From the IMG/VR virus record IMGVR_UViG_3300025133_009608, positions 62,001 to 126,000 of that record: a DNA stretch of 64,000 nt; one strand, 5' to 3'. Position numbers and translations under genes: made by a program. The notes beneath the pieces were generated by a model that worked only from the letters and a program-made list of their open reading frames with translations, was not told the origin of the DNA and made no database searches. This document shows positions 387 to 26,567 of the stretch, one piece after another; within the stretch, counting starts at the first letter, position 1, and every line of letters begins with the position of its first letter.

Positions 387-1130
387 TTACCACTCATCCG
401 GCATAATTTGATTGAAGTTTTCGAAAAAATCTTCTTTTCCATTTTTTCTAAAAAATTCATCTACGTCCTTATAGGGCTTTGGAGTCTCAAGAGATCTCAG
501 CTTTATACCGCGATTAATAAATTTCTTATAAATTCTTTTTACAGATTCCTTCCCCGCATCATCTGAGTCAAGCAGGAATGTCATTTTATCAGTATACCTT
601 GCAAGTCTTAAAAAATGCTTTTTAGAAAATGCAGTACCACAAATTGCAACAGAATTATAAATTCCAACTTTAGTCAAACTTATTTGGTCAAAATAACCTT
701 CTACAATATATACGTTTTTTCTTTTTAAAATATGATTTTTTGATTGCCCTAATCCATAAAGTATATTTGCCTTCTTGTAAGACGAGTTTTTATACTTTGG
801 AATTCCGATTCCCCTTCTGGAGTATTCATCCAAAAGAGTCCTTCCACTAATTCCTACGACCTCGCCGTATTCATTCTCAATTGGAAACGTTAAATAAAAG
901 TAATCCGAGAACTGGCTGCGGCCCAGTCCATCTAGGATATTCGCTCGCAATAATGATTCCTCCGAAACAAATTGCTTTAGTTTGGAGGGGTTTTGTGGAA
1001 AAAATCCGATACCATATCTATCTATAATCTCATCCGATAAAAGCCTGTCCTCTCTTAGGTAGGACAGGCACTCTTTTGAGTTTTTAAGATTGGATTTACA
1101 AATATCAGATAAAATTTGCATATCGGTCAT
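387..1130 (-). CDS. DnaG-type DNA primase catalytic (Toprim) core lacking the N-terminal zinc-binding domain
   Basis: LTFPIENEYGEVVGISGR, PKYKNS, LYGL, YIVEGYFD, VAICGTA and LDSDDAG are DnaG RNA-polymerase-domain motifs. Only 247 aa with no CHC2 finger. Confidence 0.85.
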   Translation of the reverse strand: MTDMQILSDICKSNLKNSKECLSYLREDRLLSDEIIDRYGIGFFPQNPSKLKQFVSEESLLRANILDGLGRSQFSDYFYLTFPIENEYGEVVGISGRTLLDEYSRRGIGIPKYKNSSYKKANILYGLGQSKNHILKRKNVYIVEGYFDQISLTKVGIYNSVAICGTAFSKKHFLRLARYTDKMTFLLDSDDAGKESVKRIYKKFINRGIKLRSLETPKPYKDVDEFFRKNGKEDFFENFNQIMPDEW

Positions 1131-1133
1131 AAC

Positions 1134-1487
1134 TTAATTCTGCTCTATCTTTAGTTGACTCGTACTCTCTATTGCGCAAACCATATGCTTTGTAATATTT
1201 ATCTTGCACCCCTTTCCCGAGTTCGGACACTGAGCCCCAACCACCATTCCCGATACAACTGATGCTTCAACATCTTTATGGCAGGTTTCGCATGGAAACA
1301 TAAAGGCTTTTCTATTCTTGGAGCGAAGCACATCCCCATTCTTCTTCATAGAAAGCTTCGAATAGGACGATACGTTCACAACCTCCTCTCCGCACTCGTT
1401 GCACATCGCCTTGTTTTCATCAACATCCAACGACACGTCTGTTGTTCCTCCATTTAACTTACATCCTATATTGCATCTTACAATCAT
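1134..1487 (-). CDS. Small Cys-rich (putative Zn-binding) hypothetical protein
   Basis: Cys pairs CNIGC, CNEC, CETC, C..C in 117 aa; co-oriented between recA and the primase. Confidence 0.55.
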   Translation of the reverse strand: MIVRCNIGCKLNGGTTDVSLDVDENKAMCNECGEEVVNVSSYSKLSMKKNGDVLRSKNRKAFMFPCETCHKDVEASVVSGMVVGAQCPNSGKGCKINITKHMVCAIESTSQLKIEQN

Positions 1488-2654
1488 TTATTGCCCCATA
1501 GCCATAATTAGCGGATTTTCTTCTATCTCAGCATCATCGGGGGTGTTATCAGCCGCTGGCGCCGGGCCTCCTCCGAGGTATATTTCTCTTATTTTCTCTT
1601 GGGTTGAATTCATAAAAGGTTTATTTTTAGAAAACGACTCCAAGGCGGCGTCTCTTCCTCTGATTTTTTCTCCATCTATCATATAGTTTTGCGTATTTGG
1701 CCTTTCAATCAAGTCATACTTTAGGGCCAATCCAAATATCTCCTCCTCTATATTAACCACTCCCTTTAGGTACTCAACGAAATATTCTGCTTTTTGGAAT
1801 GGCTTTCCGACTTTATTTTTCTCAACCTTTGCTCGAACTCTGTGCCCAATTCTTGCATCATTCTTATCTTTAATAAGATTATCGGCACCAAACATTGGAG
1901 CCATATTGATCATAAGACTACAGGCATGCTTGAGCGCCTTGCCTCCCGGGCTAGTTGCCGGGTCTCCAAAGTGCTGTCCGAGATTTACTCTTACCTGGTT
2001 TATGCCAATAAATGCAACATTAGCCTTTGCGACCTGAGGCGTTAATTTCTTTAATTCCGTAGATAAGAATCTTGGAATTGGAGCCATATTCGCCTTACCG
2101 ATATCTGCCGCCAACTCAAGTGGAGTATTTAATACTGCAATTGAATCAAGAACAATTATGCCCAAATCCTTAAATCTTGGGTCAGTGCCCTCTTCTACGT
2201 AATCCAGGATTCCTTTCATTTTCTTAGATATCTTTTTAGTTACTGAGTTTACCTTTACAGTTCCAAGAAGTCCTTCAAAAATCTGCCTTGCATCATTAGT
2301 TTTTATGACCATTACCCTGGAAGTGTCAACGCCCTGACTCGATGCCCACTCTGGATCGTATGTATATTCTGCGTCAATAAATAGAGCTGTATTATTTGGG
2401 TTTTCATCTAGATAGCTCTTAATGCAAGACAGAGAAAGCATAGTCTTTCCGGAGCTTTCCTTTCCTGCAAGCTGCGTAATTCTTCCACGGGGTATTCCCC
2501 CAATGCCTATAGCCTCATCCAAAGATGGGCTCCCGGTGGATATCGCTTCGTACTTTCCAATTGTATCGATATTTCCGTCAAAAAATACCGCGTCTTCACC
2601 GAAGAATTTCTTAATTTCCCTTTCGGCTTCGCTCTCTGAGATTCTCTTGGCCAT
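1488..2654 (-). CDS. recA: RecA recombinase
   Basis: ISTGSPSLDEAIGIGGIPRGRI, Walker A GKESSGKT, FIDAEY, IVLDSIA, FIGINQVR, PGGKALKHA, KVEKNKVGKPF. Confidence 0.95.
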   Translation of the reverse strand: MAKRISESEAEREIKKFFGEDAVFFDGNIDTIGKYEAISTGSPSLDEAIGIGGIPRGRITQLAGKESSGKTMLSLSCIKSYLDENPNNTALFIDAEYTYDPEWASSQGVDTSRVMVIKTNDARQIFEGLLGTVKVNSVTKKISKKMKGILDYVEEGTDPRFKDLGIIVLDSIAVLNTPLELAADIGKANMAPIPRFLSTELKKLTPQVAKANVAFIGINQVRVNLGQHFGDPATSPGGKALKHACSLMINMAPMFGADNLIKDKNDARIGHRVRAKVEKNKVGKPFQKAEYFVEYLKGVVNIEEEIFGLALKYDLIERPNTQNYMIDGEKIRGRDAALESFSKNKPFMNSTQEKIREIYLGGGPAPAADNTPDDAEIEENPLIMAMGQ

Positions 2655-2667
2655 GATATTCTCCGTT

Positions 2668-4314
2668 TTAATATTTGTGATTTAAATTGCCATTTTGTGG
2701 CGGGCGCCATCCGGCCGGAGGCTGCCAGCTCGATGGGTCATCTGGGGCCTCTGATACTATCGATTCTGTATTTAGAAGCAATAACGCTATACTTGATGCA
2801 TTCTCAACCGCAGTTCTGGTAACCTTCTTCGGGTCCAGCACTCCCGCATCAAACATGTCTGCGTATGTATTGGTTGCGGCATTATACCCAAAATTTATAT
2901 TGTCAGACTCAAGAATCTTTGAGATGATAGGCTCTGGGTCTATAAATCCATTCTTTAAAATTTGAGAAATTGGTCTGGCACATGATTTTATCAAAACCTC
3001 TGCGGCAGGCCTAAGCCTCTCGTCTATCTCAGATAAATCAATCATATTTGCAGCACGAAGCATCGCAACTCCACCACCAGGGACCACTCCCTCCTCTATT
3101 GCCGCCAAGGTTGCACTAAGAGCGTCATCCATTCGGTCGCCCTTCTCTCTGAGTTCGAGTTCCGTGCTGTAACCCACTGTTATTACAGCTGCGCGACTAT
3201 TCAAAAATGAAAGCCTCTTTTTCAAATCGATTCTTTCGGAATCCCCCAGTAAGATGTCTTGATCTCGCTTATATTGCTCTATCTTCTTTGAGACTCTATC
3301 TGAATCTTTTTCTCCATCAATTATTTTTGTTGTCGATTTCCCAACAACCACTTGCTTGGCAAGTCCCAAATCCGAAGCCTTCATATCCCTGAGCAAGGCG
3401 CCCGACTTGGGGCTGCAAATATTTGTACCAACCAACATGCTGAGATCATCTAGCCAGTCGGCCTGAGAGGGCCCCATGGTAGGAATCTCTACCGCCACCA
3501 CTTTTAGTCGGCCGAGCTTGTTATTCGCGACCAACGTGGATAGAGCCTCCTGTTTTATTGCCCTAGCAAGAAGCAGCAGCGGCTTATTGTCATTTGACAG
3601 GCTATTAAGCATTGCCATGCAATCCGTTAAGTGCGTTACTTCTCTGTCCACAATGAGAACATTACAATTCTCCATAACAATGCTTCCGCGGTTATTATCC
3701 GCCAAAAATGCAGGAGTAACATATCCAGTTTTAAGCTCTACCCCATCCACAATTCTAACCGTAGTTTCTCCGCCGGGAGACGCCTCTGCCGTTACTGTTC
3801 CGGAGAACCCGACCGAATCGAATGCCTCTGCAATCTTCCCTCCCAAGAGGTGGTCGTTATTTGCAGATATAGTGGCAATGCTTTTTACCATATCATGTCC
3901 GTTAGTTTGAATAGATATGCTATCTAAGTTTTTTGAAATCTGCTCTACAGCCCAAGTAAGCCCATCTCTAAAATCAAGCGGGCTATAGCCCGACTCCATA
4001 AGGACTGCCCCTCTGGAGATAATTTCATGAGCCATTACTGTTGCGGTTGTGGTTCCGTCTCCTGCGATATCTGCGGTTCTTCCTGCAACTTCTTTTACAA
4101 GCTGGCAGGCCAAGTCTTCCACCGGATCTCTTAGCACAACCTCTCTTGCGACAGATACGCCATCCTTTGTAACTACTGGAGCTCCAACAAACTTGCCGAT
4201 GACGACGTTTCTTCCTTGAGGTCCCATCGTAACCGCGACAACGCTTGCTAACTTCTCCACCCCAGACAAAATCTTATCTCTTGCCGCTGTGGAGTGCAAA
4301 ATATCTTTAGCCAT
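2668..4314 (-). CDS. groEL: Chaperonin GroEL/Cpn60-like, copy 1 (divergent)
   Basis: VTMGPQGRNV, VTKDGVSVA, AGDGTTTATV, ISANND, EEGVVPGGG, GVLDPKKVTR. Atypical Pro/Trp C-tail with no GGM repeats. Confidence 0.93.
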   Translation of the reverse strand: MAKDILHSTAARDKILSGVEKLASVVAVTMGPQGRNVVIGKFVGAPVVTKDGVSVAREVVLRDPVEDLACQLVKEVAGRTADIAGDGTTTATVMAHEIISRGAVLMESGYSPLDFRDGLTWAVEQISKNLDSISIQTNGHDMVKSIATISANNDHLLGGKIAEAFDSVGFSGTVTAEASPGGETTVRIVDGVELKTGYVTPAFLADNNRGSIVMENCNVLIVDREVTHLTDCMAMLNSLSNDNKPLLLLARAIKQEALSTLVANNKLGRLKVVAVEIPTMGPSQADWLDDLSMLVGTNICSPKSGALLRDMKASDLGLAKQVVVGKSTTKIIDGEKDSDRVSKKIEQYKRDQDILLGDSERIDLKKRLSFLNSRAAVITVGYSTELELREKGDRMDDALSATLAAIEEGVVPGGGVAMLRAANMIDLSEIDERLRPAAEVLIKSCARPISQILKNGFIDPEPIISKILESDNINFGYNAATNTYADMFDAGVLDPKKVTRTAVENASSIALLLLNTESIVSEAPDDPSSWQPPAGWRPPQNGNLNHKY

Positions 4315-4849: not shown

Positions 4850-4860
4850 TTCGAAACTCC

Positions 4861-4908
4861 AAATAAAAGAGCCGAGGAGCCCAACCATAGCATGTTAAGC
4901 TCCTCGGC
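4861..4908 (-). terminator. Rho-independent terminator after the SSB gene
   Basis: Perfect 10-bp inverted repeat GCCGAGGAGC (4871-4880 / 4899-4908) followed on the minus strand by TCTTTTATTT. Confidence 0.75.
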
Positions 4909-10725: not shown

Positions 10726-13700
10726 CTACTTTATAAGTTGCCCGAGCAGATCCTCTGCTCTTGCGATCATTATTATACGCTCCAGGCTCAACTTTCGCTT
10801 CGCTATTTTTACCATTTTTTCGGTCGAAGATTTCTTCCTGATCTCTTCTTCTCCAAATAGGGCACCGACCTCGTTCGCATGCCTCTCTAGCATTGAGTTC
10901 ATATCGCCTGTCAGGTTCTCCCAGAGCCTGTTTGTAAAATTAAAGATACCATGGGCGTCGTCTCTCCCGAATGGCTTATCGCTGTCACGCGAATACATTA
11001 TCTTCATAGAGTTTAGCTTTGCTATGTCCAAGATTTCATCAGAATCATACGATCTTATCCCGTCTAGAGCCTCTGGATCGTCTGGCTTTATATCTGCCAT
11101 TATCCGAATATAGGCCCCAGGACTCAAAACAGACGTCTTTATCCCTCCCGACTCCTCGGGGGTAATCATTATGCTTCTATCTGTGGAGCCATTAATTTCA
11201 TAAATTCCACCGGCATATCTTGACCAATTTTCAGCCTTCTTGTAAAAAGTACCCCTCTTTATTGCCCCTATATGACTCTTCATCATTGCTTGTCTATCCT
11301 TTGTCTCAAAAGTAGACGAAGAAACATCTTTACTCGCCTCAAATTTGCTCATATCCGGAGAGTCCCAAAAAAGAGTTGAATTCCCCACTTCTGACGTCCA
11401 CTCTTCTGAATCATACTTTAATACTTTTTTAACCCCATCGTGTCCCAGCTTCCCCACTATGCCTCGGCCATTAAGAATATCTTCTGTGTCAATTGTTATC
11501 CCTTCTATTTTCTTTTTTCTAATGGCCAAATTAATATCACTTGCCATGACCTCTAGGCCATACATATTTACCAGAGCATTTTTAAAGTTTGCCTGAACGC
11601 TGGCACGATAAGCATCGTTATCTCCAGAGCCCCACATTCCGTGGCCTCCGAACCTGGGGCCATACTGCTCGTTCATAATCATATGATTCGCAGTTACCCA
11701 ATCCACCATTGGAATATATTGCATAGAGACTGGATGATACCTATCAACCACTCTTGAGCCTTCACGACTCTCGGAACCCATTAGAGCCTCAGAGATAGTC
11801 TCTCTCATTATTCCATTCTCATCTGGAGTAACTGAGTGCTCTTTTTTTGCAGTCATTGTTAGCGAACTAATTGTTCGAAATGGCAGTGAGCGATACTCGT
11901 CGTGTAGGGATGATATTATGCCTATATAGTGCTTTTTGATCGCAGCTCTTAGCTCCGGATAAAGGGACTCGTCGATCATTTTAGAAAAAGACGACTCGTC
12001 GATGAGTGCGAGGCTCTTGAGCTTCTTGGCGGCCTTGGTAGCGGCATTCTCATCTCCTCTCATGTGGGCTGTGTGCAAGGCGTCTACTCCTTCGATATGC
12101 CTCCTCATCCGGCTATATGATTTGTCTATTTTCGACATTATCAATGACGCTTCCGCCGGAGACCTTTGCATGGCCCAGGACAAGTCTTTTGTCATCTTTC
12201 TTCCTCCAGATGATATTTCAACTGGAAGTCTAATGTCAATGACCGGGACCCTCGTTGGGTATGCTGGCCGAATACTTGTAACTTCTGGCTTTAAAGAGCT
12301 CTGAGGACGAGTAACGGTCCCCGCGTCTGTTATTGACGGAGAGAAGGCCATAGGAACCACCACTCCAACGTGGCCATTATATAGATCCCTTCTTGGAAAA
12401 GGAGTCTTTGCCGAGAAATCAGGATAAGTAATTCTTCCAAATGGAATTCCGCCCGTAGATGAGTACCCGATCATGTCGTTTGAAATTAGGCCCGGAACAT
12501 CTCCATCTTTTTTTAAAATCTTAGTGTAAGGATGATATGCCACACTTATATGCTCCATCGTCTTCTCAAAAGAGTATTTTGGGCTCGTGGTAGTGTCCGG
12601 CACCGCGAATACTGACCAGCCGTTTTCGATTACTTCTTGGGGGAGCTTTTCTGTTAAATCATCTCGAGGATTTCCATATGGAGGATGAAGAACTCTCCCC
12701 TCTTTTATAATCCCTTGGGCCAGTATATATGCAATGCCCTGAGCGTCCGGGCTTGGAATTCCAAACCCGTATGCATCGCCCGGGTCGGCGGCGGTCGATA
12801 ATATGTGCATTATGCCCCGAACATAGTATCCGGCTGACTTTCCGAATTTTGAATCTTTTAATGCAATGTCTTCGCTGAACCTTGCTATTTTGGCCGAATA
12901 TGTGGGGACATACCTCTCGGGATTACTTCCTGTGACTCTAGCATACTTATCTTCTCTGTGAAGAGATATATCAACAACTGATATGTCCCCATATATGTGC
13001 CTAATGATATCCGCCGCGTCATCACCATTGCCTGAAAGCTGAGACTCCAAAAAGCCCCTTGCCCTTTCCAGGTATGAGTGTGACAATGACGCGGCTCGCA
13101 GGCCAGAAATTGTAGCACTAAGCTCGCCAGAGAGGTCTTCCATGGACTCTTTCCATGTTCTTATCCCTCCCGGAGTATCGAGAGACCACGGGGATGACTC
13201 CTCATCGCTACCAGTCGTTGCGAGTGCATCTCTTTCGCTTTTTGTTATTCCGGACAGGTCCTCGAAAGAAAGTTGCATAATAGCATCTGAAGATGATAAG
13301 TCGACTCCAAGATTATAGCCAATATATCTAGCCGGACTAAGATCTTTATTTAAATAAATCTTTGATATTCTAGCTAACAAGTCGGATAACCTCAATGCAG
13401 TCGCCAGCATAACTAGCCGGCCTGTGAGTTCGCTTCTTCTTCTCCCCATTTTCTTCTTATATCCACGCGGCACCTTCTCATTGGGTCGAAGAGTTAAGTC
13501 TTCCGACAGGGTGGACTCCTCCATGGTTAGGGCTGGGATTAAAATTTGATATATAGAAGAAACATAATCAGAGCCGATTAGAATCGTCCCAGCCGCTCCA
13601 TGACCATAAAGCGACAACGCTGAAGACACCCCCTCCTCTATAACTCCTTGAACTTCTTCCTTGCTGTATTGCGACAAGCTTCTTAATAAATCTGGGTCTT

Positions 13701-16700
13701 TTCCCTCAAACTTGCTAATCAGTGGTTCTGCTGCCTTATTTGCCATTTCAACTATTTTATCATCATCCTTTTCGACGCCGTGGTCGGCCAATATGCCCAT
13801 CAACTCTTCTCTTATCCGGCTCATTTGCTCATCGCTGCAACATGGGTCATTTTCACTACGCAAAACCCCTGCAACATCCAATGATGTCCCGACATTTTTC
13901 CATGTTATTATATTCTTTAACTGCGCTGTAATCATGTCCCCCACCTGTCTGATGTATAGACCCGGAAGATCTCTGGATTCAAACGCCCTCTTGTTCTGCT
14001 CCTCCTTGTAATTCTGGTGCTGCATCTTGTCCGATTCCGTTACTCCGGTAGCCTCCCCGCTGCTCGAAACACCATCATCTTGAACCATATTGGTTCCAGA
14101 TGAAGCCTTGGTTGGATCTCCGAGCTTAACTTCGCCTGGATCAAAAGACTCAAAAACCGAACTTGTCGGAGACCATATATACCGAAGCCTTGATCCGATA
14201 TCGGAATTAAAATGATACCTGGCGGGCTGCGAAGCTGCGCCTTTTGATGGCATTATAAAATCATAATCCCTCCGAAGACCGAGAGGGCTCTCCTTCCAGC
14301 TCGAGTAGCTTTTGCGATCGAGGTCATTGCTGTCTTCCACAAGAATTCCGGCCTCGACAAAGCGTGCTGTGCTATTCTTTCCCCTGGAGGTTAGCAGTCT
14401 ATCTTTTTCAATCGACTCCCAGCTCATACTGCCTTTCTTCCCGAGGTCGTACCCGGCGTGCGCAGACCCGAATCCTATAGATTGCCCAATGGTAAATTTA
14501 TGTCCGTTCTTGCATACCAGTCCCAAATCTTTTATCGCACTATACTTGTGAATTCCGGCACCATGAGTGGAGTCTAGCTTGACCCCCATGGCTAATGATA
14601 ATAATTCTGCTATTTTTCTAATCCTGTTATCGTCAAAACCTGCGCTTGCATTTTTTAACTCCAATATAAATGGCTCGAGATCTCCGGCGTCGATCCCGAA
14701 TCTTACTAAAAGATTTAAGACCCCCCTCGTCGCCTCTCCTTTGTCATCACTAACAACCCGACTTAGGAAGCTGGACATTGAATTGCTACTATTCGGGTCC
14801 CTATCGAATGATGAAAGAGATGTGGCAGAACCACAAACTAAATACCCAGCCCTCCCAGGCTCTATAGCAGACACCCGTCCGTCCGCCGTAGTAGGAGCGG
14901 CGTAATCTGTCGACTCTCCTGTCATAGCATCTATTGGGCCGTAGTGAGGAATTGCAAGATATCTATATTTATTTCGAATATCCCTTGGGATATTCGAGGA
15001 TACCACCTGCTCCTCAATCTCTATATGGCATGGGCATGCAAAAAATACCCTAGAGAATTTCCAACCTCCGGATCGGACCTTTTCAAAATATCTCTCAAAA
15101 ACCTCCCTCTCATCCTCGGAGACTGCTCCGGATCTTACCGCTTCATTCAACTCTTCTATAAAGCCCGGGCCGGCTGCAGCCGGCACAGGCTGTAGGTGTT
15201 CTGGGCGGATTCTAACTTCTGGGTCCTTTCTTTTGAGCAGCTCTGAACTCAAAGATAATCCGCACTGTGATACAACATCTGGCTTCCCGTCGCCGGCGCA
15301 ACCGCCCGCCTTGTCGCAGGCGAACGGACACTTAAACCGAACGGTCGAAACCTCTACTCCGGCCGTCTGAATTTTCTTGGAGCCCCTAATCGATCCGAGG
15401 GCCTCTTGCCGCCGAAGCATTCCCTCGACATGATCTTCTTTTTTTCTCGACCTAATTAGCTCCTCTATTTCGTCCCAATTCTTCGGCTCATCTGGCTTCT
15501 TGCTATACTCATAACGAATTACAGATCCCAATCCCTCCGGATCTAACATGAATTCTCGATTTAATATTTTGCCACTAGAACTTATTGGGCTGTAGTTTTG
15601 AATTCTAAAATCAGAAGTCTTCTGAAGATCTACTGCAGATTCTTTTCCAGACATATTTCTTGTGTATTTGCTGAACCGAATCCACTTATTACACATTGGG
15701 CATTCAATTCCATTCCAGCCGGTGTACTCTTTAGTATTAAGCTTGGCTATTGTAATCATTCTAATAAATGATTTACTAATGCTGCGATACATCGAGTGTG
15801 TTAGAAATAACTTTCCATATTTATGGGCGCGATTTCTCATGAAGTGCTCTTTAAACTTTCTTCTGATCTGAACCTCATACACTTCATTGTAAGTGGTTTC
15901 AAAGTTTTCAATCTTTTTGTCTTCCTTGCTTACTCCGCGAAACTTCTGAAGCGCAAAAGATGGAAATACAAGCGAAGTAATCATCACAATAGACGTCTCT
16001 AGCATTTTATTTCCATTTTTAAGCATAGACGGAGACATCAATAGGTCCAAAATATCCTCGGCGGCCTCGGATCCTACCGCCCGATAGGAGCGATGAAGAT
16101 CAAAGACCTCTTCGTCCCAAATTTTTATTGCAGAGTAAAGATCATTTGCATCGCCTATAACTATAGAGCGGTTCTCTTTAAACTCAGTGGTTACAAAGCT
16201 TCCCTTGGCGTTTATGTCTGCGCCATTCAAAGAGTTATTTTTCAATATTTCTATTTTTGTTAGGATGGAGCTCTCGAGCCTGCTCCTAACGGAAAGATCT
16301 ACGGACACCCTCACTATTGCTCCGGAGTCATCCCTGGTTTCTGTAATGGCATCCATTGGCCCAGATACCCCCGATCCCCTGAAGCCATCGTAAAAGCCGC
16401 AAACTCCTTGACTTCCAACCCCTGAGGCCCCCTGGGAGCGAGAAGCTATAAGCCTAACCTTTAGCGCCTGATCTTCCTTTGGCCTTTTTATTGCATCCTC
16501 CCCCTTGAACACCTCTCTGGCTGCCTCTTCCTTTTTTTCTTTTTTCTTATCGGCGGGGGTGGCGGGCTCGCCGGGGGCGTCGTCGCTTATACCTTCGAAA
16601 ACCTCGTCCGAGGATATGGCCTTTCCGGCTATTGATGTTAAAATATTATGAATCACCTCGTGATGAGAATACACATCCTCCAAAATGATTTCCATCTCCG

Positions 16701-17376
16701 ATTTGCCAGAAGCAGCCTCCAGCCCTGATAGGACAGAGTTCATTTCATTTAATGCTGTAGCAAGATCTGCTGCATCAGATGATGGAGACGAAAACGAATC
16801 GTGGGGAACATCAACCATTAGAACCGATCCGACCAGGGCTGCGATGGCCTTTAGTCCGGACTCGGAGTCCGCCTCGAACTCAATGCCAGAAACACTCTCG
16901 GGTTCCAAAAGAGTCTCTGCCCAAAACGACAGTAAATCCTCTGGAGACTGCCCCCTTCCGGGGAGGCCGCGGGACACGCCACGTGCGCCTGACTCCTCTT
17001 CGTCACGATCCTCATCGGGGTCTCTCTCTTCAAAAAGAGATGGAGTAAAATCTTCGCCAACACTCCTCGAGAAAGAGAGCATCTTCTCTATGCTCTCTAT
17101 AGGGAGTTTAAAAAATGTTAAGCCTCCAATAATTCCAATTGCCTCGATGGCTTCGGACTTTGAAGTATTAGGAGACACCATCGAAAGAAGATCCTTCTCT
17201 GTCATCTCTCCGGCCTCAACCATCCCAAGGAGTGTTGCCCCCATCTCGTCGGAGTCGAACTCCTTGCGGGCATCTATGATTGAGTCATAAATTTCTTTAT
17301 ATTCAAAATTATCTGGGATTTGAGTCTTATCAAATAGTTCTTTTAGCTTTCCGGTGATTTCTGGATTTATATTCAT
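10726..17376 (-). CDS. Very large (2216 aa) hypothetical protein with several Cys/His clusters
   Basis: Uninterrupted 6.6-kb ORF with CPMC, CPFACDKAGGC, CPCH and CKNGH; no catalytic motif recognised. Confidence 0.8.
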   Translation of the reverse strand: MNINPEITGKLKELFDKTQIPDNFEYKEIYDSIIDARKEFDSDEMGATLLGMVEAGEMTEKDLLSMVSPNTSKSEAIEAIGIIGGLTFFKLPIESIEKMLSFSRSVGEDFTPSLFEERDPDEDRDEEESGARGVSRGLPGRGQSPEDLLSFWAETLLEPESVSGIEFEADSESGLKAIAALVGSVLMVDVPHDSFSSPSSDAADLATALNEMNSVLSGLEAASGKSEMEIILEDVYSHHEVIHNILTSIAGKAISSDEVFEGISDDAPGEPATPADKKKEKKEEAAREVFKGEDAIKRPKEDQALKVRLIASRSQGASGVGSQGVCGFYDGFRGSGVSGPMDAITETRDDSGAIVRVSVDLSVRSRLESSILTKIEILKNNSLNGADINAKGSFVTTEFKENRSIVIGDANDLYSAIKIWDEEVFDLHRSYRAVGSEAAEDILDLLMSPSMLKNGNKMLETSIVMITSLVFPSFALQKFRGVSKEDKKIENFETTYNEVYEVQIRRKFKEHFMRNRAHKYGKLFLTHSMYRSISKSFIRMITIAKLNTKEYTGWNGIECPMCNKWIRFSKYTRNMSGKESAVDLQKTSDFRIQNYSPISSSGKILNREFMLDPEGLGSVIRYEYSKKPDEPKNWDEIEELIRSRKKEDHVEGMLRRQEALGSIRGSKKIQTAGVEVSTVRFKCPFACDKAGGCAGDGKPDVVSQCGLSLSSELLKRKDPEVRIRPEHLQPVPAAAGPGFIEELNEAVRSGAVSEDEREVFERYFEKVRSGGWKFSRVFFACPCHIEIEEQVVSSNIPRDIRNKYRYLAIPHYGPIDAMTGESTDYAAPTTADGRVSAIEPGRAGYLVCGSATSLSSFDRDPNSSNSMSSFLSRVVSDDKGEATRGVLNLLVRFGIDAGDLEPFILELKNASAGFDDNRIRKIAELLSLAMGVKLDSTHGAGIHKYSAIKDLGLVCKNGHKFTIGQSIGFGSAHAGYDLGKKGSMSWESIEKDRLLTSRGKNSTARFVEAGILVEDSNDLDRKSYSSWKESPLGLRRDYDFIMPSKGAASQPARYHFNSDIGSRLRYIWSPTSSVFESFDPGEVKLGDPTKASSGTNMVQDDGVSSSGEATGVTESDKMQHQNYKEEQNKRAFESRDLPGLYIRQVGDMITAQLKNIITWKNVGTSLDVAGVLRSENDPCCSDEQMSRIREELMGILADHGVEKDDDKIVEMANKAAEPLISKFEGKDPDLLRSLSQYSKEEVQGVIEEGVSSALSLYGHGAAGTILIGSDYVSSIYQILIPALTMEESTLSEDLTLRPNEKVPRGYKKKMGRRRSELTGRLVMLATALRLSDLLARISKIYLNKDLSPARYIGYNLGVDLSSSDAIMQLSFEDLSGITKSERDALATTGSDEESSPWSLDTPGGIRTWKESMEDLSGELSATISGLRAASLSHSYLERARGFLESQLSGNGDDAADIIRHIYGDISVVDISLHREDKYARVTGSNPERYVPTYSAKIARFSEDIALKDSKFGKSAGYYVRGIMHILSTAADPGDAYGFGIPSPDAQGIAYILAQGIIKEGRVLHPPYGNPRDDLTEKLPQEVIENGWSVFAVPDTTTSPKYSFEKTMEHISVAYHPYTKILKKDGDVPGLISNDMIGYSSTGGIPFGRITYPDFSAKTPFPRRDLYNGHVGVVVPMAFSPSITDAGTVTRPQSSLKPEVTSIRPAYPTRVPVIDIRLPVEISSGGRKMTKDLSWAMQRSPAEASLIMSKIDKSYSRMRRHIEGVDALHTAHMRGDENAATKAAKKLKSLALIDESSFSKMIDESLYPELRAAIKKHYIGIISSLHDEYRSLPFRTISSLTMTAKKEHSVTPDENGIMRETISEALMGSESREGSRVVDRYHPVSMQYIPMVDWVTANHMIMNEQYGPRFGGHGMWGSGDNDAYRASVQANFKNALVNMYGLEVMASDINLAIRKKKIEGITIDTEDILNGRGIVGKLGHDGVKKVLKYDSEEWTSEVGNSTLFWDSPDMSKFEASKDVSSSTFETKDRQAMMKSHIGAIKRGTFYKKAENWSRYAGGIYEINGSTDRSIMITPEESGGIKTSVLSPGAYIRIMADIKPDDPEALDGIRSYDSDEILDIAKLNSMKIMYSRDSDKPFGRDDAHGIFNFTNRLWENLTGDMNSMLERHANEVGALFGEEEIRKKSSTEKMVKIAKRKLSLERIIMIARAEDLLGQLIK

Positions 17377-18740: not shown

Positions 18741-19571
18741 TCAGTCCCTATTGAGTATTTCCGCTATTAAGCGCTTGGTTCTTGGCTTCTTTCCAAGCTT
18801 TTTAAGCTTTATACTCGCAGCCCATCCAGTTATTCCGACCTTATCCGCAGCATCCTTTAGGGATAGATCGTATAAGCAGATTAATTCTAAAATCTTCGCG
18901 GTCTTTGGATCAATAGAATCAGTTAATGAACGCAAGGATCTTTGAAACTCCATCATCTGCAGAGAGGTTCTTTTGTCCCCATAAATAGAAGCATCCGCGT
19001 CTATACTGTCTTGAAAGAACTCTCCGTACTCGTCGCCGCTCTTATTCTTTTTTGGATTTATCTGAGAAAATGATATTTCTCCGCGTGATTTTCTAAAAAG
19101 AGCCTTATGCTCCTTTCCGCACGAATCACATATGCCCAAAATATCACTATTTGGATCATTAGACTTTAGAATCTCACCGTCACAATCGCAAAGTATATTT
19201 CCATTTTTTGACTTTAATGAAAATGCATCATTTGAAAGTTTATTTATACTTCTTATTTTTGATACCAACTTGTTTCTAAGATGAATATGCAAGAAGGTAC
19301 TAAGCTTTACTTTCTTTTCGGGGTCAAAGGCCTTGATCCCCTCGATTGCTAATATTACTAGCTCTTGCTTTATGTCTTCAAATCTAAATCCAGGCATATG
19401 TGTTCTAGACGCCATCTTGCACAAAAGCGGATCTATCTTCTTTAAGACCGCTCCATAGCCCTCGCCCGAAATAGTATCTACATATATCTCCTCATTATAC
19501 ATTCTGACTACACCAGAATAACTCTTCATTAACTTCTCCGGCCTTGCTTGTGGCTTAAATAATTGTATCAA
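18741..19571 (-). CDS. Phage sigma-70-family RNA polymerase sigma factor with a Cys4 insertion
   Basis: Region 2: FEDIKQELVILAIEGIKAFDPEKKVKLSTFLHIHLRN. Region 4: ILELICLYDLSLKDAADKVGITGWAASIKLKK. C-x-C-x17-C-x2-C lies between them. Confidence 0.8.
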   Translation of the reverse strand: MIQLFKPQARPEKLMKSYSGVVRMYNEEIYVDTISGEGYGAVLKKIDPLLCKMASRTHMPGFRFEDIKQELVILAIEGIKAFDPEKKVKLSTFLHIHLRNKLVSKIRSINKLSNDAFSLKSKNGNILCDCDGEILKSNDPNSDILGICDSCGKEHKALFRKSRGEISFSQINPKKNKSGDEYGEFFQDSIDADASIYGDKRTSLQMMEFQRSLRSLTDSIDPKTAKILELICLYDLSLKDAADKVGITGWAASIKLKKLGKKPRTKRLIAEILNRD

Positions 19572-21288: not shown

Positions 21289-24200
21289 CTATCTGGCCAA
21301 AAAGTCGATCGAACTTTTCCCATTCACCTTCGTTACATCAATAACGTGATCAAACTTTTCCTTAAGCGTCTCGTCGTGGGTTATCACCATGATTTTATAT
21401 TGAGCCTCTAGCGCACGAATAACGCTCACAAATAGCGTCTCAACGCCGAAGCGGTCCAAGGGGGAGTTCACCTCGTCCAGCAGCAAAAACTCCAGCGAGG
21501 AGCCCCCGTAGCGGCTGGAAAGATCGCTCAAGGCCACCCGAAGCGACAAGGATATTCGAAACTTTTCTCCACCACTAAGCGACTTGAACCCGTGTAGTAC
21601 TCCATCTTTTTTAACCTTAAGATCCAAAGTCTCCACCGTAGAGACCCCATCTGATCCGGTTCTTTGCGTCTCTAGGGTTATTGTTGATGGCTCATTACAG
21701 ATAGATGATAAAATCTTATTTGACGAAGACTCTAGGTCTTCAATGATTCCGTCCAAAAGAATGGTTTGAATTCCGTTCTTGCCCATCATTTTTGACATAC
21801 TTTTAAATAAAGATATATCTTTAAGCTTAGATGACAAAGATGTCTTCTTTCCTCTCATATCTTTTACCGACTGCTCGAGCTGAGAGACCCTTTCTGTTAG
21901 CCTTCCGACATCTTCGGAGTTACCAGAAATGATAGAGTCAAGGTCTTCGCGTCGATCTTTTAGGTCCTTAACCTTATCTCTAAGAACCTGGAAGTCGGAG
22001 TTTTGAAGGGATTTTAATATATCTTTATTTACAGACAACTTCGAACTAACGTTTCCAAGTACACGCTTCAGCTCTATCAGCTTCTTCTTCTCTCTCTCGA
22101 GCCCTTCGCTCAAAATTGAGTGGCGGAACTCAAAAGATGACAGCTCCTTTTCCAGGGTGTCTATTCTTAAGTTTTCCTTCTTATACCCCTCATAATCTGA
22201 GATGCTCTTTTTTACAATCCTAATCTTTGATGCAGCTCGAGTCATTGACTCGGAATAGCGGTCTGACTTTTCCTTATGATCATCTCTCAGGGACTCGTAC
22301 AGGGACGACTCAATAGCCTGATGGCACACATAGCACTCGCCCGGAGTTATGTGAATCTCACTAAGAGACCCTAGCGCATCCTTTGCAGAGGATCCTGACG
22401 AAGATAAGGATATTAGCTCCTCTCTAAGTTCTGAGAGTTTATCATCACAACTTTCTACTTTTGATAACTGAGATAATGATGCTCTCTTTTCTTCAATTTT
22501 CTTCTGCTCGGCATCTACTTCATCTGTCTTGTCTTCAACCTGCTGGCTAAGCTCATTTGCATCACCAGAAAGATCTGCCTCCCTCTCTTCGAGAGCTGCG
22601 ATTGACTCTAAGATCTTATCGTATTTATCTGTATCAAGAGCTTTTTTCATATTGGAATATTGAGAGACAAGGCCCTCAAGATGCTTGTTGGTTGCTGACA
22701 ACTCCTTCTTTGCATTTGCGACTATTGTCGTCACCTCCTTTAACTCAGCACTCGCATCTCCCAGGTCTTCGACCGTCTCTGCATAGGTGCTAACTGCCGC
22801 CTCTAATATGTCAGTTTCTGATTTTAATAATCGAGCTTTTTTCTTGGCCTCTTTCTCGTAAGAATCCCATCTAGAGATGTCAACTATAGACTTTAGAATA
22901 TCCTTCTTTCTAGACGGATCCGCCTCTGCAAACTCTGATATATCATTTTGACGAAAATATATAGAGCTTGTAAATGTTTTGTGATCAAGCCCAATAAGCT
23001 CCTCTATGCTGCTATTTGTAGCACCAGAAGTAGATCCAGAGAGATCCTTCCAGGCTCCAGTATCATCTTTTTGAGCCAACTCCACGGTTGAAGTAGAGCT
23101 CCCCCTGTTTCTCTCTCTTATAACTCGATACACTCGATTATTATGTTGAAATTCAAACTCCACGCAGCACGAAGTTTCTCCCCACAGGACTATGTCGTCC
23201 ATCATGGCCGACCTTGCCTTATTAAAAAGCACCCAAAGCATGCTTTCGAAAATTGACGAATTATGCGTAATAAATCCATTCAGGGCGTATAGATGAGTAT
23301 CATTTCCAACCTGTATGTCATAAGTCTGAGCCTTGCCGATACTATCGATTCTCTTTATTTTATCCCAGTATATATCAGACTCGCTAAGGCTCCGGAGCCT
23401 ATTGCTTCCCAGGGCGTCGGCATATTTACCCAGTCTTTCCCTGGACATGTTAGATTGGGACAGCTGCCTCTTAGTAAGCCTCAGTTCTGACCGATGCCCT
23501 CGCAGCCCCCCAGACTCAATTCCTTCTATTATCTCCCCGCAGAAGAGGGAAGATGGAATGACATCACGATTAGGATTCGCCTTCCTCTTTCGAGAGGAGG
23601 CGATCAGGGTATCTATCCTCGATCTTTTCGGCCCATAAACATGACCATCGACAAGGTTGTAAAACTTTAAAATATTATTATAATTCGAATGAATCGACAA
23701 GACCCATGAATCGTACTTGTCGGCAACTCGCTTGTACCTTATTGATGCCTTTATTCCAAATCTCAAAAAGAGCTCTTGAAGGTCGTATACAAACCCCTTG
23801 GAGCCGAGACCGATAGAAACCTCCGGAGATGAACTGTCAGAAGAAGAGACGTACCCGTCGCCGGAAAAGAACATTCCAACGAAAGCGCCTACATTCTCTT
23901 CTGATTCCGAAAAGATTGCTCTTGGGACTCTTTTGTTTATAGCGAGGCTCCCCCAAAGAGCATGCTTTGACAAAAACTCACGAGCCGTCCTCGGAGAATT
24001 TGCAACTTTGGCTAGCGATGTAAGATTAGAATCATCATAAGAAATAAGCTTATCGTAGCACAAGGTGCTGGATAGAGATTCAATTCTTTTATGATTTGAT
24101 GGCGATTCCTTCTTTAAAGATAGGCCGATCTGTATCATTCTATCTAAAATTTGCCTTCTTATGTCCTTAATGTTCTTCGTTATTACCAAGGAGTATGTTA

Positions 24201-24816
24201 TTCCCCGCCGGGATAGGTCTGCGCCAAAAATACTCTGTACGTCATTGTGAGCAATGCTTATAATCTCGTCATCCGTGTTCGTAAAGTTGCACGATGTACC
24301 AGTAAGCCCGCCCTCCGCCGCATATAGGCCGAGAAGCCGAGCCTCTTCGATCCTCATTGAAGAACGGGGATTGACTACGGGCAGTGCGCGTGGGGAGGCA
24401 ACAAAGTCCCCGACGATCAAATCTTCGGCAGGTATACATTCCGTATCGGATATCATTACGGGATGGGTACGGGAAACTCTCTCGATACCACCAGAGGTCA
24501 TCTCTACTTCTAAGATGTCCTTTTCTCCGGACAGGTGCGTTGCTTCAACTTCCACTGGGCGCATAAGGAGGTCTTCGTCCAACCCCCATATCCAGAACTC
24601 CTTAAAGTTCTCATGGAGATCTTTGACGGTTATCTTTTCTCCAGAAAACGCCTCGGTCAGAATCGTATCCCCAGAAAGGCACTTCCCGGACCCGTTGGAC
24701 TTTCCATAATCTCCCTCTGTATTTCCAATCAGGAGTACCGACTGGAACTGGGAAAAATCAATCTCACTATCTGCGTGAGAGAAAAAGTTTTTTAACTTCA
24801 AACTAAGTGGAATCAT
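21289..24816 (-). CDS. sbcC: SbcC/Rad50 SMC-like ATPase interrupted by an intein
   Basis: LKNFFSH, Walker A NGSGK|SS split by the intein, coiled coils with Zn hook CYVC, signature LSGGEK, Walker B LLLDE and H-loop ITHD. Confidence 0.9.
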   Translation of the reverse strand: MIPLSLKLKNFFSHADSEIDFSQFQSVLLIGNTEGDYGKSNGSGKCLSGDTILTEAFSGEKITVKDLHENFKEFWIWGLDEDLLMRPVEVEATHLSGEKDILEVEMTSGGIERVSRTHPVMISDTECIPAEDLIVGDFVASPRALPVVNPRSSMRIEEARLLGLYAAEGGLTGTSCNFTNTDDEIISIAHNDVQSIFGADLSRRGITYSLVITKNIKDIRRQILDRMIQIGLSLKKESPSNHKRIESLSSTLCYDKLISYDDSNLTSLAKVANSPRTAREFLSKHALWGSLAINKRVPRAIFSESEENVGAFVGMFFSGDGYVSSSDSSSPEVSIGLGSKGFVYDLQELFLRFGIKASIRYKRVADKYDSWVLSIHSNYNNILKFYNLVDGHVYGPKRSRIDTLIASSRKRKANPNRDVIPSSLFCGEIIEGIESGGLRGHRSELRLTKRQLSQSNMSRERLGKYADALGSNRLRSLSESDIYWDKIKRIDSIGKAQTYDIQVGNDTHLYALNGFITHNSSIFESMLWVLFNKARSAMMDDIVLWGETSCCVEFEFQHNNRVYRVIRERNRGSSTSTVELAQKDDTGAWKDLSGSTSGATNSSIEELIGLDHKTFTSSIYFRQNDISEFAEADPSRKKDILKSIVDISRWDSYEKEAKKKARLLKSETDILEAAVSTYAETVEDLGDASAELKEVTTIVANAKKELSATNKHLEGLVSQYSNMKKALDTDKYDKILESIAALEEREADLSGDANELSQQVEDKTDEVDAEQKKIEEKRASLSQLSKVESCDDKLSELREELISLSSSGSSAKDALGSLSEIHITPGECYVCHQAIESSLYESLRDDHKEKSDRYSESMTRAASKIRIVKKSISDYEGYKKENLRIDTLEKELSSFEFRHSILSEGLEREKKKLIELKRVLGNVSSKLSVNKDILKSLQNSDFQVLRDKVKDLKDRREDLDSIISGNSEDVGRLTERVSQLEQSVKDMRGKKTSLSSKLKDISLFKSMSKMMGKNGIQTILLDGIIEDLESSSNKILSSICNEPSTITLETQRTGSDGVSTVETLDLKVKKDGVLHGFKSLSGGEKFRISLSLRVALSDLSSRYGGSSLEFLLLDEVNSPLDRFGVETLFVSVIRALEAQYKIMVITHDETLKEKFDHVIDVTKVNGKSSIDFLAR
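23260..24681 (-). mobile_element. Intein (474 aa) with LAGLIDADG homing endonuclease in the SbcC P-loop
   Basis: Begins CLSGDT and ends YDIQVGNDTHLYALNGFITHN before Ser+1. LAGLIDADG-like blocks LLGLYAAEG and FVGMFFSGDG. Excision restores GSGKSSIFESMLW. Confidence 0.92.
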
Positions 24817-24819
24817 TAA

Positions 24820-25983
24820 TTATCCTATAATCTTTTTCGCTTCAGATAAAAGCTTCTCTTTCATTTTCGATTCAATGCCCTGGCTAGCGATAAACGCCGA
24901 AAACATTTCATAATCATCTTCATGATCTAAGATATCATTATCTCTTATAATTCTTACTATTACCGGCTCTACCGTTACCCTGGAGACGAAAAACGCACCA
25001 GCATCTCTTGCTAGCTTTTGAACGTAAAGCTTATCCGCAGCTGGAAGCACAGACTCTTTTACTGAAACCTTCAGCCTTACAATCTTGTCTTTCATGTCGA
25101 TTTTTGAGACCTCCTCCTCTATCCTGTCCTTGCAGTTGGCAAAGGTTGCATCAGAAATATCAATAACCGAATCGATCAGGTCTCTCGTGGGAACTTTATG
25201 AAAATTTACCTTTTTATTTACCACGTCATAATCGATAAAGTACTTATCGACGTTGGCGTCTCCAAAGTTCGTACGCTCCATAGAGCCTACGTAAATTGAT
25301 GGTGGATTCTTTTTCTTAAGAATTCTAAATGTATGCAAGTGTCCCATCACCGATAGGTCGCATGTCTCAAAGCAATTTGCGTTAACCAGGATCTCCGATC
25401 CGCCATAGTCGTTATAGCTTCCTTCGTAATAAAAGTTATGCCCGACGGCCATTATCGGAGACTTGTTATCCACAGATCTGCACAATTCTCTTACGTGAGC
25501 CTCGTATCCGGCAGACCGCTCTGCGCAGGACTCTCCCGCATACATTCTTTTGTCTCGGTATGGCATTAACAAGATGTTTACTCCCTCATTTTTTGAATTA
25601 AAAAAGGTTACAACCTCTGGCTCTACAATCAGCCTGACATTGGGGTAGTCTTTCGCTGGGAGCGATGTAATTGAACTCGTAAATGAATCCCCGCTCCTTC
25701 TGTAGTCATGGTTTCCCATAATTACAACAGTAGCAATATTCGCTTTAGACAACCTCTTGAGAGCTCGATTTGCTATATCAATATGCTCTGGAGTTGGGTT
25801 TCTGTGCTCAAACAAGTCTCCGGTTTGAATAAAAACATCTACACTTGTATCTATACAGTGATCTATAATATGATTTAGACTCTTCTCGTAATCATCTATC
25901 CTCGTGTTACCGCCGGCGTCCTTTGTTCTTCCAAGGCCAAAGACCGCCCCTATGTGTGAGTCTCCGCAAATAACTACTCTCAT
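24820..25983 (-). CDS. sbcD: SbcD/Mre11 nuclease
   Basis: GDSHIG, TGDLFE, MGNHD, VGH and MGHLH..R, YVGSMERTNFGD; directly upstream of sbcC. Confidence 0.9.
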   Translation of the reverse strand: MRVVICGDSHIGAVFGLGRTKDAGGNTRIDDYEKSLNHIIDHCIDTSVDVFIQTGDLFEHRNPTPEHIDIANRALKRLSKANIATVVIMGNHDYRRSGDSFTSSITSLPAKDYPNVRLIVEPEVVTFFNSKNEGVNILLMPYRDKRMYAGESCAERSAGYEAHVRELCRSVDNKSPIMAVGHNFYYEGSYNDYGGSEILVNANCFETCDLSVMGHLHTFRILKKKNPPSIYVGSMERTNFGDANVDKYFIDYDVVNKKVNFHKVPTRDLIDSVIDISDATFANCKDRIEEEVSKIDMKDKIVRLKVSVKESVLPAADKLYVQKLARDAGAFFVSRVTVEPVIVRIIRDNDILDHEDDYEMFSAFIASQGIESKMKEKLLSEAKKIIG

Positions 25984-26567
25984 TTATTATACCTCTTTTT
26001 GCACACTCTCTTTACTTCAGAGAGGAGTGCTTTACATTTTTTGGCCTCATTCTGGCCAATGCTTTCAATGTGGTGGTCAGTCCTCTTCATTAGTGTCATT
26101 ATCCACTCTTCGTCATTCGGATACCTCTCCTGGAGACTTCGAAAGAAAACAGATATATCCATCAGCGATGAAAAAGTAGACGGCTTAGTCACTATCACCC
26201 CGGACTTGTCGGTCTTTGAGTGATCAATTAATGGCTCTAGTGCGCGGAGGGCTGCCATAAAGTCACACCCTGTTGCTAATATATAAAAGTCTATTTGATT
26301 GTGGCTACTCGAACAGCCGTAGCAATAAAAATTATTATTAACCGAGTCTATATATAGAGAGCTCGTCCTCTCTCGACCGCCCTTGTGATCTGGAGATGGG
26401 CAGCAACATCTGTGGGTAAAGTTTCCAGAAGATACTCTTTCTGGCCTTATCTTTAACAGATCCAGAATATCTAAAAATCCAACCCCCCTAATTATATCGT
26501 CCTTTCTAACTCCCACTTCTAAAGAGCCCTCCCCAGAATGAAGTCTTTTTCCTTGTATGGGCTTCAA
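25980..26567 (-). CDS. Stand-alone CHC2 zinc-finger protein (primase ZBD-like); likely GTG start near 26516
   Basis: CPSPDH...RTSSLYI.....FYCYGC....NQIDF.....GCDFMAALRAL matches the DnaG zinc-binding domain; no Toprim domain follows. Confidence 0.8.
   Translation of the reverse strand: MKPIQGKRLHSGEGSLEVGVRKDDIIRGVGFLDILDLLKIRPERVSSGNFTHRCCCPSPDHKGGRERTSSLYIDSVNNNFYCYGCSSSHNQIDFYILATGCDFMAALRALEPLIDHSKTDKSGVIVTKPSTFSSLMDISVFFRSLQERYPNDEEWIMTLMKRTDHHIESIGQNEAKKCKALLSEVKRVCKKRYNK

What the first reader, a model, noticed from the sequence alone, without database searches (positions are those of the whole stretch)
387..26567. Apparently split DnaG primase: Toprim core and CHC2 zinc-binding domain encoded about 25 kb apart
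Seen: 387-1130 is a DnaG catalytic core with no zinc finger and no helicase-binding domain. 25980-26567 is a DnaG-type ZBD (C-x4-H-x20-C-x2-C) plus a helical tail, with no catalytic domain. Established: the DnaG ZBD recognises the priming site and can act in trans between primase molecules. Inference: a two-subunit primase, or a free ZBD that retargets or inhibits host DnaG.
Basis: partly seen in the sequence, partly recalled or inferred. Interest (0 to 1): 0.7.

Follow-up and report, generated by a model that had tools for sequence, protein, structure and literature searches.

The report
Two-piece DnaG primase in jumbo phage
A 317-kb uncultured marine phage encodes the catalytic core and the zinc finger of its DNA primase as two separate, co-inherited genes 25 kb apart; the zinc-finger protein carries a helical tail predicted to clip onto the core. 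The same split is already visible, though unstudied, in Bacillus phage G.

Summary
Window 387-1130(-) is a 247-aa DnaG catalytic core (DNAG_N plus Toprim, catalytic E and DxD invariant). It has no zinc finger and no helicase-binding domain. It consists of a true DnaG CHC2 zinc-binding domain plus a three-helix tail.

The whole 316,664-bp phage genome holds one of each and no full-length primase or Prim-Pol. Both halves are kept in every sufficiently long relative: 33 of 42 IMG/VR records, 3 of 3 in the reverse direction, and all four near-complete genomes. The core sits in a 248-278-aa open frame, with the same 24-28 kb spacing where I worked it out.

A complex model places the tail (residues 115-144) on the Toprim domain (residues 170-181): ipSAE 0.83 against a best control of 0.30. 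One relative carries an intein in the zinc finger.

It is a possible third part or a rival partner.

The kind is not new. Bacillus phage G annotates gp229 (zinc finger only) and gp419 (core only) 154 kb apart, and Iyer et al. 2021 mention standalone primase zinc ribbons in jumbo phages. No function has been tested.

The parts
387..1130 (-). Catalytic subunit: 247-aa DnaG RNA-polymerase core (DNAG_N plus Toprim). It has no zinc finger, no C-terminal helical subdomain and no helicase-binding domain.
   Evidence: Pfam and PHROG hits. The core aligns to Aquifex DnaG 2au3 residues 108-338 of 407. E144, D188 and D190, together with K112, Y113 and N115, are invariant in 53 homologues. More than 301 homologues are all about 250 aa.
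25980..26516 (-). Zinc-finger subunit: 178 aa, made of a DnaG-type CHC2 zinc-binding domain (about residues 1-100), a linker and a three-helix tail (115-176). The longest ORF, from the TTG, would extend to 26567.
   Evidence: Pfam PF01807 is over its cut-off. The fold matches 1d0q and 2au3. The 34 homologues are 149-184 aa long, all but one 174-184 aa, with invariant C37, C39, H44, C65 and C68. Tail residues 115-144 are predicted to contact the core.
1134..1487 (-). Cys117: a 117-aa double zinc-ribbon protein (C5-x3-C9...C29-x2-C32 and C66-x2-C69...C87-x6-C94) encoded immediately upstream of the core gene. It is a possible accessory or third subunit.
   Evidence: It lies upstream of the core in 14 of 14 and 75 of 76 related loci, usually overlapping the core's start. 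Seven of the eight Cys positions are invariant; C69 is replaced in two relatives. The 257 representatives found are essentially all standalone and none is fused to a primase. It is absent from one complete relative.
1488..2654 (-). RecA/UvsX-like recombinase, the conserved upstream neighbour in the order RecA, Cys117, core.
   Evidence: Pfam RecA 175.8 bits and phrog_97. Synteny is seen in 14 relatives.
24820..25983 (-). SbcD/Mre11-like nuclease. Its start overlaps the stop of the zinc-finger gene by 4 nt.
   Evidence: Pfam Metallophos and phrog_100. The order zinc finger, SbcD, SbcC is conserved in about 40 loci.
26506..27621 (-). FtsK/SpoIIIE-like ATPase, the upstream neighbour of the zinc-finger gene. 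It is missing in some relatives.
   Evidence: Pfam FtsK_SpoIIIE 96.4 bits and phrog_1358. Synteny table.
2..382 (-). Minimal sigma-like protein (region 4 only) directly downstream of the core gene. It runs off the window.
   Evidence: Pfam Sigma70_r4_2 28.8 bits. The same neighbour is present in relatives.

Best explanation
The phage makes its DnaG-type primase from two polypeptides.

The 247-aa protein is the catalytic RNA-polymerase core: the DNAG_N template-binding subdomain plus the Toprim metal centre. The 178-aa protein supplies the CHC2 zinc-binding domain. In one-piece DnaG this domain selects the priming trinucleotide and governs primer initiation and length, and it is known to work in trans between primase molecules (established knowledge from E. 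coli, Aquifex and T7 studies).

In place of a covalent linker, the zinc-finger protein has a three-helix tail. Its first two helices are predicted to dock on the Toprim domain of the core, around the helix at core residues 170-181.

Shown: domain identities, single copy of each half, strict co-inheritance, and purifying selection.

Predicted only: the tail-to-Toprim contact.

Inferred: that the pair primes together, and that Cys117 or the third tail helix links the enzyme to the phage's DnaB-like helicase.
For: Domain calls and fold.

Catalytic residues are invariant.

The whole genome has one DNAG_N/Toprim core, one CHC2 domain, one DnaB_C helicase, no Prim-Pol and no helicase-binding domain.

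33 of 42 IMG/VR records with the zinc-finger gene also hold a core in a 248-278-aa open frame. Of the 9 without one, 7 are incomplete records (CheckV 8-33% complete) and 2 are near-complete 38-40-kb phages with only weak zinc-finger hits. Three large records found through the core all hold the zinc finger. Spacing is 24-28 kb in the four large relatives where I worked it out from the coordinates.

The complex model gives ipSAE 0.83 against a best control of 0.30. That mark was reached by 58 of 80 solved complexes and 2 of 110 mismatched pairs. The three runs agree in at least 86% of contacts, and the partner's pLDDT is at least 74. Replacing the core with an unrelated protein gives 0.00.

An intein (Cys1 ... 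His-Asn / Cys+1) sits exactly at zinc ligand C68 in a complete 335-kb relative. By general knowledge, inteins are typically found in essential replication proteins.

Bacillus phage G independently shows the same two-gene layout.
Against: There is no biochemical evidence. The complex score is the model's own confidence, and the job (three chains, my own alignments) differs from the tool's calibration.

Predicted interface residues are not significantly more conserved than the rest: permutation p = 0.16 for the tail and 0.26 for the core.

The core gene has a closer genomic partner in Cys117, which could be the real zinc module.

The zinc-finger gene is translationally coupled to SbcD, not to the core.

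Bacillus phage Goe3 has a free zinc finger in addition to a complete primase, so free zinc fingers can serve other roles.
Confidence: 0.62

Rival explanations
1. Cys117, the adjacent double zinc-ribbon protein, is the core's real zinc module, playing the role of the Cys4 ribbons of T7 gp4 and T4 gp61. The CHC2 protein has been recruited to another task, for example DNA-end or ssDNA recognition for the SbcCD nuclease with which it is co-translated, in recombination-dependent replication.
For: Cys117 lies directly upstream of the core in 75 of 76 loci, usually overlapping its start. It still does so for distant homologues (E about 1e-10 to 1e-13). The stop of the zinc-finger gene overlaps the SbcD start in about 40 loci, even where the FtsK-like gene is lost.
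Against: The complete relative G045 keeps the core and the CHC2 protein but has no Cys117. Cys117 matches no primase zinc ribbon by Pfam or by fold, and it is never fused to a primase among 257 representatives. The complex model docks the CHC2 protein on the core specifically. By my reading of the gene list, start-stop overlaps are common throughout this tightly packed, one-strand genome, so the SbcD overlap is weak evidence.
Confidence: 0.14
2. The free zinc-finger protein acts on the host. It binds host DnaG or the host replisome and inhibits or retargets host priming, while the phage core primes on its own.
For: It is established knowledge that DnaG zinc-binding domains can act in trans. 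The docking helix of the core resembles the same helix of bacterial DnaG in the alignments. Goe3 carries a free zinc finger besides a complete primase.
Against: The protein is always co-inherited with a zinc-finger-less core and never with a complete phage primase in this clade. The model docks it on the phage's own core. It lies inside the replication and recombination module rather than among early host-takeover genes. The host is unknown, so no test against host DnaG was possible.
Confidence: 0.08
3. The two genes are functionally independent leftovers. The core is a self-sufficient minimal primase, or has a non-priming Toprim role. The zinc-finger protein is a general ssDNA- or origin-binding factor.
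For: The interface is not significantly conserved. The tail has no recognisable homologue.
Against: There is strict co-occurrence over divergence down to 30-35% identity. The DnaG-specific zinc-finger motifs are strongly conserved. The complex score is high and the control with the core replaced is clean.
Confidence: 0.1

Closest known systems
Bacillus phage G gp229 plus gp419 (JN638751)
   Same: This cultured jumbo phage has the same layout. gp229 is a free CHC2 zinc-finger protein of 210 aa, annotated 'DNA primase'. gp419 is a core-only protein of 235 aa, annotated 'DnaG-like DNA primase'. The genome has one hit of each domain. gp419 is 28% identical to the window core over its length (E 2e-19), including the LARY helix. 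The gp229 zinc finger aligns with the family profile at 92.5% probability.
   Different: The two genes are 154 kb apart on opposite strands, against 25 kb on one strand here. gp229 lies near the helicase gene rather than next to SbcD. Its C-terminal half does not align with the tail of this family. No Cys117-like gene is annotated directly upstream of gp419; the phage G genome was not searched with the Cys117 profile.
Bacterial one-piece DnaG primase (Aquifex 2au3, Geobacillus zinc-binding domain 1d0q, E. coli core 1dd9/1dde)
   Same: The zinc-finger fold is the same, and so is the DNAG_N plus Toprim core with its catalytic residues.
   Different: Here the domains are on two polypeptides. The core lacks the last 65 or so residues of the RNA-polymerase domain and the whole helicase-binding domain. 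The ligand spacing is C-x4-H-x20-C-x2-C, whereas Aquifex reads C-P-F-H in the alignment. There is also an extra invariant Cys37, and the zinc-finger protein has its own helical tail.
Standalone primase-type zinc ribbons of jumbo phages noted by Iyer, Anantharaman, Krishnan, Burroughs and Aravind 2021 (PMC7824862, section 3.4.1)
   Same: [quoted passage not shown]
   Different: This phage has a Pol III alpha polymerase, like their subgroup 3.2, not group 2. Two group 2 phages I checked, Atu_ph07 and P-SSM2, gave no PF01807 hit, so their ribbon is probably another type. The paper describes no docking tail, no complex and no experiment.
T7 gp4 and T4 gp61 primases
   Same: They combine a zinc module with a Toprim core. 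In T7 the zinc-binding domain is flexibly tethered and can act in trans (established knowledge). T4 gp61 chains are weak sequence and fold matches.
   Different: They are single polypeptides with a Cys4 ribbon. T7 is fused to its helicase.

Membership tests
DnaG-type primase catalytic core (DNAG_N plus Toprim) | DNAG_N and Toprim domains score above the curated cut-offs. | tested here: met
   DNAG_N 59.1 bits against a cut-off of 26, and Toprim_2 65.7 bits against 22.1. The family profile matches 2au3 at E 3.9e-29.
DnaG-type primase catalytic core (DNAG_N plus Toprim) | The Toprim acidic residues (E and DxD) and the KYxNS motif are conserved. | tested here: met
   E144, D188, D190, K112, Y113, N115 and S117 are invariant in 53 sequences.
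Canonical one-piece bacterial DnaG | The zinc-binding domain is fused N-terminally to the core. | tested here: not met
   The domains are in separate genes 24.8 kb apart. All relatives have the core in a 248-278-aa open frame.
Canonical one-piece bacterial DnaG | There is a C-terminal DnaB-binding domain. | tested here: not met
   No match in either protein. There is no PF08278 or PF00772 hit anywhere in the genome.
Canonical one-piece bacterial DnaG | The enzyme synthesises RNA primers on ssDNA. | not testable with these tools
   This needs an enzyme assay.
CHC2 zinc finger of DnaG (PF01807) | The family model scores above its cut-off and the fold is that of the zinc-binding domain. | tested here: met
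   29.8 to 31.1 bits against a cut-off of 24.9. Foldseek match to 1d0q at E 1e-4 with TM 0.70 by target, and a match to 2au3. The profile matches 2au3 at E 7e-9.
CHC2 zinc finger of DnaG (PF01807) | The four zinc ligands are conserved. | tested here: met
   C39, H44, C65 and C68 are invariant in 29 sequences, and so is C37. The spacing differs from Aquifex. Zinc binding itself was not tested.
Two-gene DnaG primase as annotated in Bacillus phage G | A free zinc-finger protein plus a core-only protein, with no complete primase in the genome. | tested here: met
   Window genome. Phage G.
Two-gene DnaG primase as annotated in Bacillus phage G | Both halves are homologous over their full length. 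| tested here: inconclusive
   The core is homologous over its length (E 2e-19). For the other protein only the zinc finger aligns (probability 92.5%) and the tail does not.
Primase Cys4 zinc ribbon (T7/T4 type), considered for Cys117 | Sequence or fold similarity to a primase zinc ribbon, or fusion to a primase somewhere. | tested here: not met
   Pfam gives only sub-threshold hits to generic zinc ribbons. No PDB match has E below 0.3. None of the 257 representatives is fused to a primase.

The most novel reading that the evidence does not exclude
The enzyme is a three-part primase found in this clade of marine jumbo phages. It would consist of a minimal Toprim core, a CHC2 specificity subunit held by a dedicated helical docking tail, and a double zinc-ribbon protein (Cys117) that is translationally coupled to the core and replaces the missing helicase-binding domain. 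The detachable zinc-finger subunit might also be shared with the SbcCD nuclease to couple break processing to re-priming in recombination-dependent replication.
Probability: 0.15. Interest if true: 0.65.

Novelty: new member of a known kind. Interest (0 to 1): 0.42.

Why it matters
In one-piece DnaG it is hard to separate what the zinc-binding domain does in cis from what it does in trans. A natural primase whose zinc finger is a separate, docking subunit would give a clean system for asking how the zinc finger sets start-site choice and primer length. It would also help explain how a primase without a helicase-binding domain is brought to the fork.

The finding also gives an annotation rule for jumbo phages. 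A 250-aa 'primase' without a zinc finger should prompt a search for a 180-aa CHC2 protein elsewhere in the genome. In this clade it lies next to SbcD.

Tried and rejected
1. Stop-codon readthrough fusing Cys117 to the core. In the window the two ORFs are in the same frame, separated by TAA plus one codon. The frames agree in only 12 of 75 related loci, and the genes usually overlap out of frame, so this is rejected.

2. The tail as a copy of the first helices of the DnaG RNA-polymerase domain. HMMER extended the 2au3 alignment over tail residues 107-140. A tail-only profile finds no DnaG at E up to 10, and hhalign of the zinc-finger family against the core family finds nothing. Not supported.

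3. The tail as the missing C-terminal helical subdomain of the core, supplied in trans. I had no tool left to test this, so it remains an idea.

4. Extra conservation of the interface. Not significant.

5. A fusion partner for Cys117. None was found.

6. ESM Atlas features for the tail gave only sub-threshold leads. Pfam on 29 tails gave nothing consistent.

7. Cultured close relatives. tblastn against GenBank phages finds only distant one-piece primases at about 30% identity. The polymerase finds only DnaE at about 33% identity.

8. Reproducing the Iyer et al. statement on Atu_ph07 and P-SSM2. There was no PF01807 hit, no Cys117 hit, and only sub-threshold Toprim_2 hits in Atu_ph07.

9. Literature searches for 'split primase', 'two-subunit primase' and similar terms found nothing on phage DnaG.
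Full report
**What the window is.** The window is bases 62001-126000 of a 316,664-bp virus record with a CheckV completeness of 94%. The GC content is 43% and almost every gene is on the minus strand. The stretch between the two reported genes is a replication and recombination module. It contains:
- a RecA/UvsX-like recombinase
- a GroEL-like gene (by its sequence; not scanned against any family library)
- a RuvC-like resolvase
- an SSB-like protein
- a 1086-aa DnaE-type polymerase
- a sigma-like protein
- an exonuclease
- SbcC and SbcD
- an FtsK-like ATPase

No close cultured relative exists in GenBank phages. Homologues come from marine metagenomes, including Tara surface samples.

- The ORF at 387-1130(-) is a 247-aa DnaG core. 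DNAG_N covers residues 13-130 and Toprim covers 141-226.
- The family profile aligns to Aquifex DnaG residues 108-338 of 407. The C-terminal helical subdomain of the polymerase domain and the helicase-binding domain are therefore both absent.
- The catalytic E144 and D188-x-D190, and the KYxNS motif, are invariant in 53 homologues.
- The next gene downstream is a sigma region-4 protein, so nothing is hidden behind the stop codon.
- Gene calls in the databases and the family alignment put its start at GTG 26516, giving 178 aa.
- Its AlphaFold model (pLDDT 89) has a domain that matches the solved zinc-binding domain 1d0q, followed by three helices at 115-131, 133-150 and 158-176.

**It is a real, inherited split.**
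- The whole genome has one DNAG_N/Toprim core, one CHC2 domain and one DnaB_C helicase. It has no Prim-Pol and no DnaG-DnaB binding domain.
- The core family has more than 301 members, all about 250 aa. The zinc-finger family has 34 members of 149-184 aa, all but one 174-184 aa.
- Of 42 IMG/VR records found through the zinc finger, 33 also hold a core, always in a 248-278-aa open frame.
- Of the 9 without one, 7 are incomplete records (CheckV 8-33% complete) and 2 are near-complete 38-40-kb phages with only weak zinc-finger hits.
- Three large records found through the core all hold the zinc finger.
- Comparing the coordinates for four large relatives gives a spacing of 24-28 kb. The halves have therefore stayed apart, in the same module, while the proteins diverged to 30-35% identity.
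- No relative has a fused gene.

**How the two proteins may meet.**
- A three-chain model (core, Cys117, zinc-finger protein as the partner) gave ipSAE 0.83 against a best control of 0.30.
- That mark was reached by 58 of 80 solved complexes and 2 of 110 mismatched pairs in the tool's calibration.
- The three runs agree in at least 86% of contacts, and the partner's pLDDT is at least 74.
- Replacing the core with an unrelated protein gives 0.00.
- The confident contacts are all between tail residues 115-144 and core residues 170-181, 132, 135, 88 and 207-208.
- The central residues are conserved: I121, S122 and R126 in the tail, and K/R175, R178, Y179, G208 and Y88 in the core.
- The interface as a whole is no more conserved than the rest of either protein.
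- This is a prediction and not a measurement, and the job differed from the tool's calibration.

**Extra support from an intein.**
- In a complete 335-kb relative with terminal repeats, the zinc-finger gene is a 558-aa frame.
- An insert of about 380 aa begins with Cys and ends with His-Asn, followed by Cys. It sits exactly at zinc ligand C68.
- Pfam Intein_splicing scores 32.8 bits (cut-off 35.8), and there is also a Hint match.
- By general knowledge, inteins sit in conserved sites of essential replication and repair proteins. This argues that the zinc finger is needed.

- Directly upstream of the core gene lies a 117-aa protein with eight Cys positions arranged as two zinc ribbons. Seven are invariant; the eighth, C69, is replaced in two relatives.
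- It occupies this place in 14 of 14 and 75 of 76 related loci, usually overlapping the core's start. It does so even for remote homologues.
- In the window it is in frame with the core across a TAA. The frames agree in only 12 of 75 loci, so readthrough is rejected.
- Its 257 representatives are essentially all standalone, and none is fused to a primase.
- It matches no primase ribbon by Pfam or by fold.
- One complete relative lacks it while keeping the other two proteins.
- I therefore treat it as a likely accessory and as the main rival partner. Its contact with the core was not scored.

**Rival readings.**
- The stop of the zinc-finger gene overlaps the SbcD start in about 40 loci. This allows a role with SbcCD.
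- By my reading of the gene list, such overlaps are common in this packed genome, so the overlap is weak evidence.
- A role against host DnaG cannot be tested without knowing the host. It fits poorly with the strict pairing to a core that lacks a zinc finger.

**Comparison with what is known.**
- Fold search of viral proteins shows free CHC2 proteins of 170-210 aa in cultured phages.
- In Bacillus phage G, gp229 (zinc finger only, 210 aa) and gp419 (core only, 235 aa) are 154 kb apart on opposite strands. Both are annotated as primase, and each domain is found only once in that genome.
- gp419 is 28% identical to the window core. The gp229 zinc finger aligns with the family profile, but its C-terminal half does not.
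- Bacillus phage Goe3 has a complete primase plus a free zinc finger.
- Iyer et al. 2021 mention standalone primase-type zinc ribbons beside DnaG-like primases in T4-related jumbo phages (PMC7824862).
- I found no experimental study.

**Verdict.** The finding is real and is most likely a two-subunit DnaG primase. It is a new member of a kind that is already visible in public annotation. The new points are the predicted docking tail, the conserved spacing and synteny across a marine clade, the intein, and the linked double zinc-ribbon gene.

Noticed in passing
L145:1483-3159 (+), record G045 47917-49569: An intein of about 380 aa interrupts the zinc-finger gene of a complete 335-kb relative. 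It begins with Cys and ends with His-Asn followed by Cys, and sits exactly at the second Cys of the CxxC zinc ligands.
   Followed up: partly
L050:687-2246 (+) and L062:3601-5521 (-): The RecA/UvsX gene of one relative is 519 aa, with an insertion after residue 234 and a weak Intein_splicing hit. In another relative the gene is split into two ORFs at the same point. This suggests an intein or a homing element in RecA.
   Followed up: partly
window 2668-4314 (-): The phage encodes a full-length GroEL-like protein (548 aa) between the RecA and RuvC genes. The call rests on reading its sequence; it was not scanned against any family library.
   Followed up: no
window 10726-17376 (-): A 2216-aa ORF inside the replication module has no Pfam or PHROG match at all.
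   Followed up: partly
window 26506-27621 (-): A phage FtsK/SpoIIIE-like ATPase (371 aa) lies upstream of the zinc-finger gene. It is present in most relatives and missing in several (L017, L022, L026-L028, L039).
   Followed up: partly
window 27805-28480 (-): Two small genes (117 and 118 aa) with no family match are conserved upstream of the FtsK and zinc-finger genes in all of about 40 related loci.
   Followed up: no
window 28496-31999 (-): A 1167-aa protein has PKD/Ig-like repeats in its C-terminal part. No PHROG family matches it.
   Followed up: no
window 2-382 (-) and 18741-19571 (-): There are two sigma-related genes. One is a minimal region-4-only protein directly downstream of the primase core, conserved there in relatives. 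The other is a 276-aa sigma-factor-like protein.
   Followed up: no
L157 and L158 (Bacillus phage Goe3, KY368640, 83999-84667 and 111208-111360): This cultured phage has a zinc finger plus core in a single 361-aa frame and, 27 kb away, an additional free CHC2 protein. Free zinc fingers are therefore not always the missing half of a split enzyme.
   Followed up: partly
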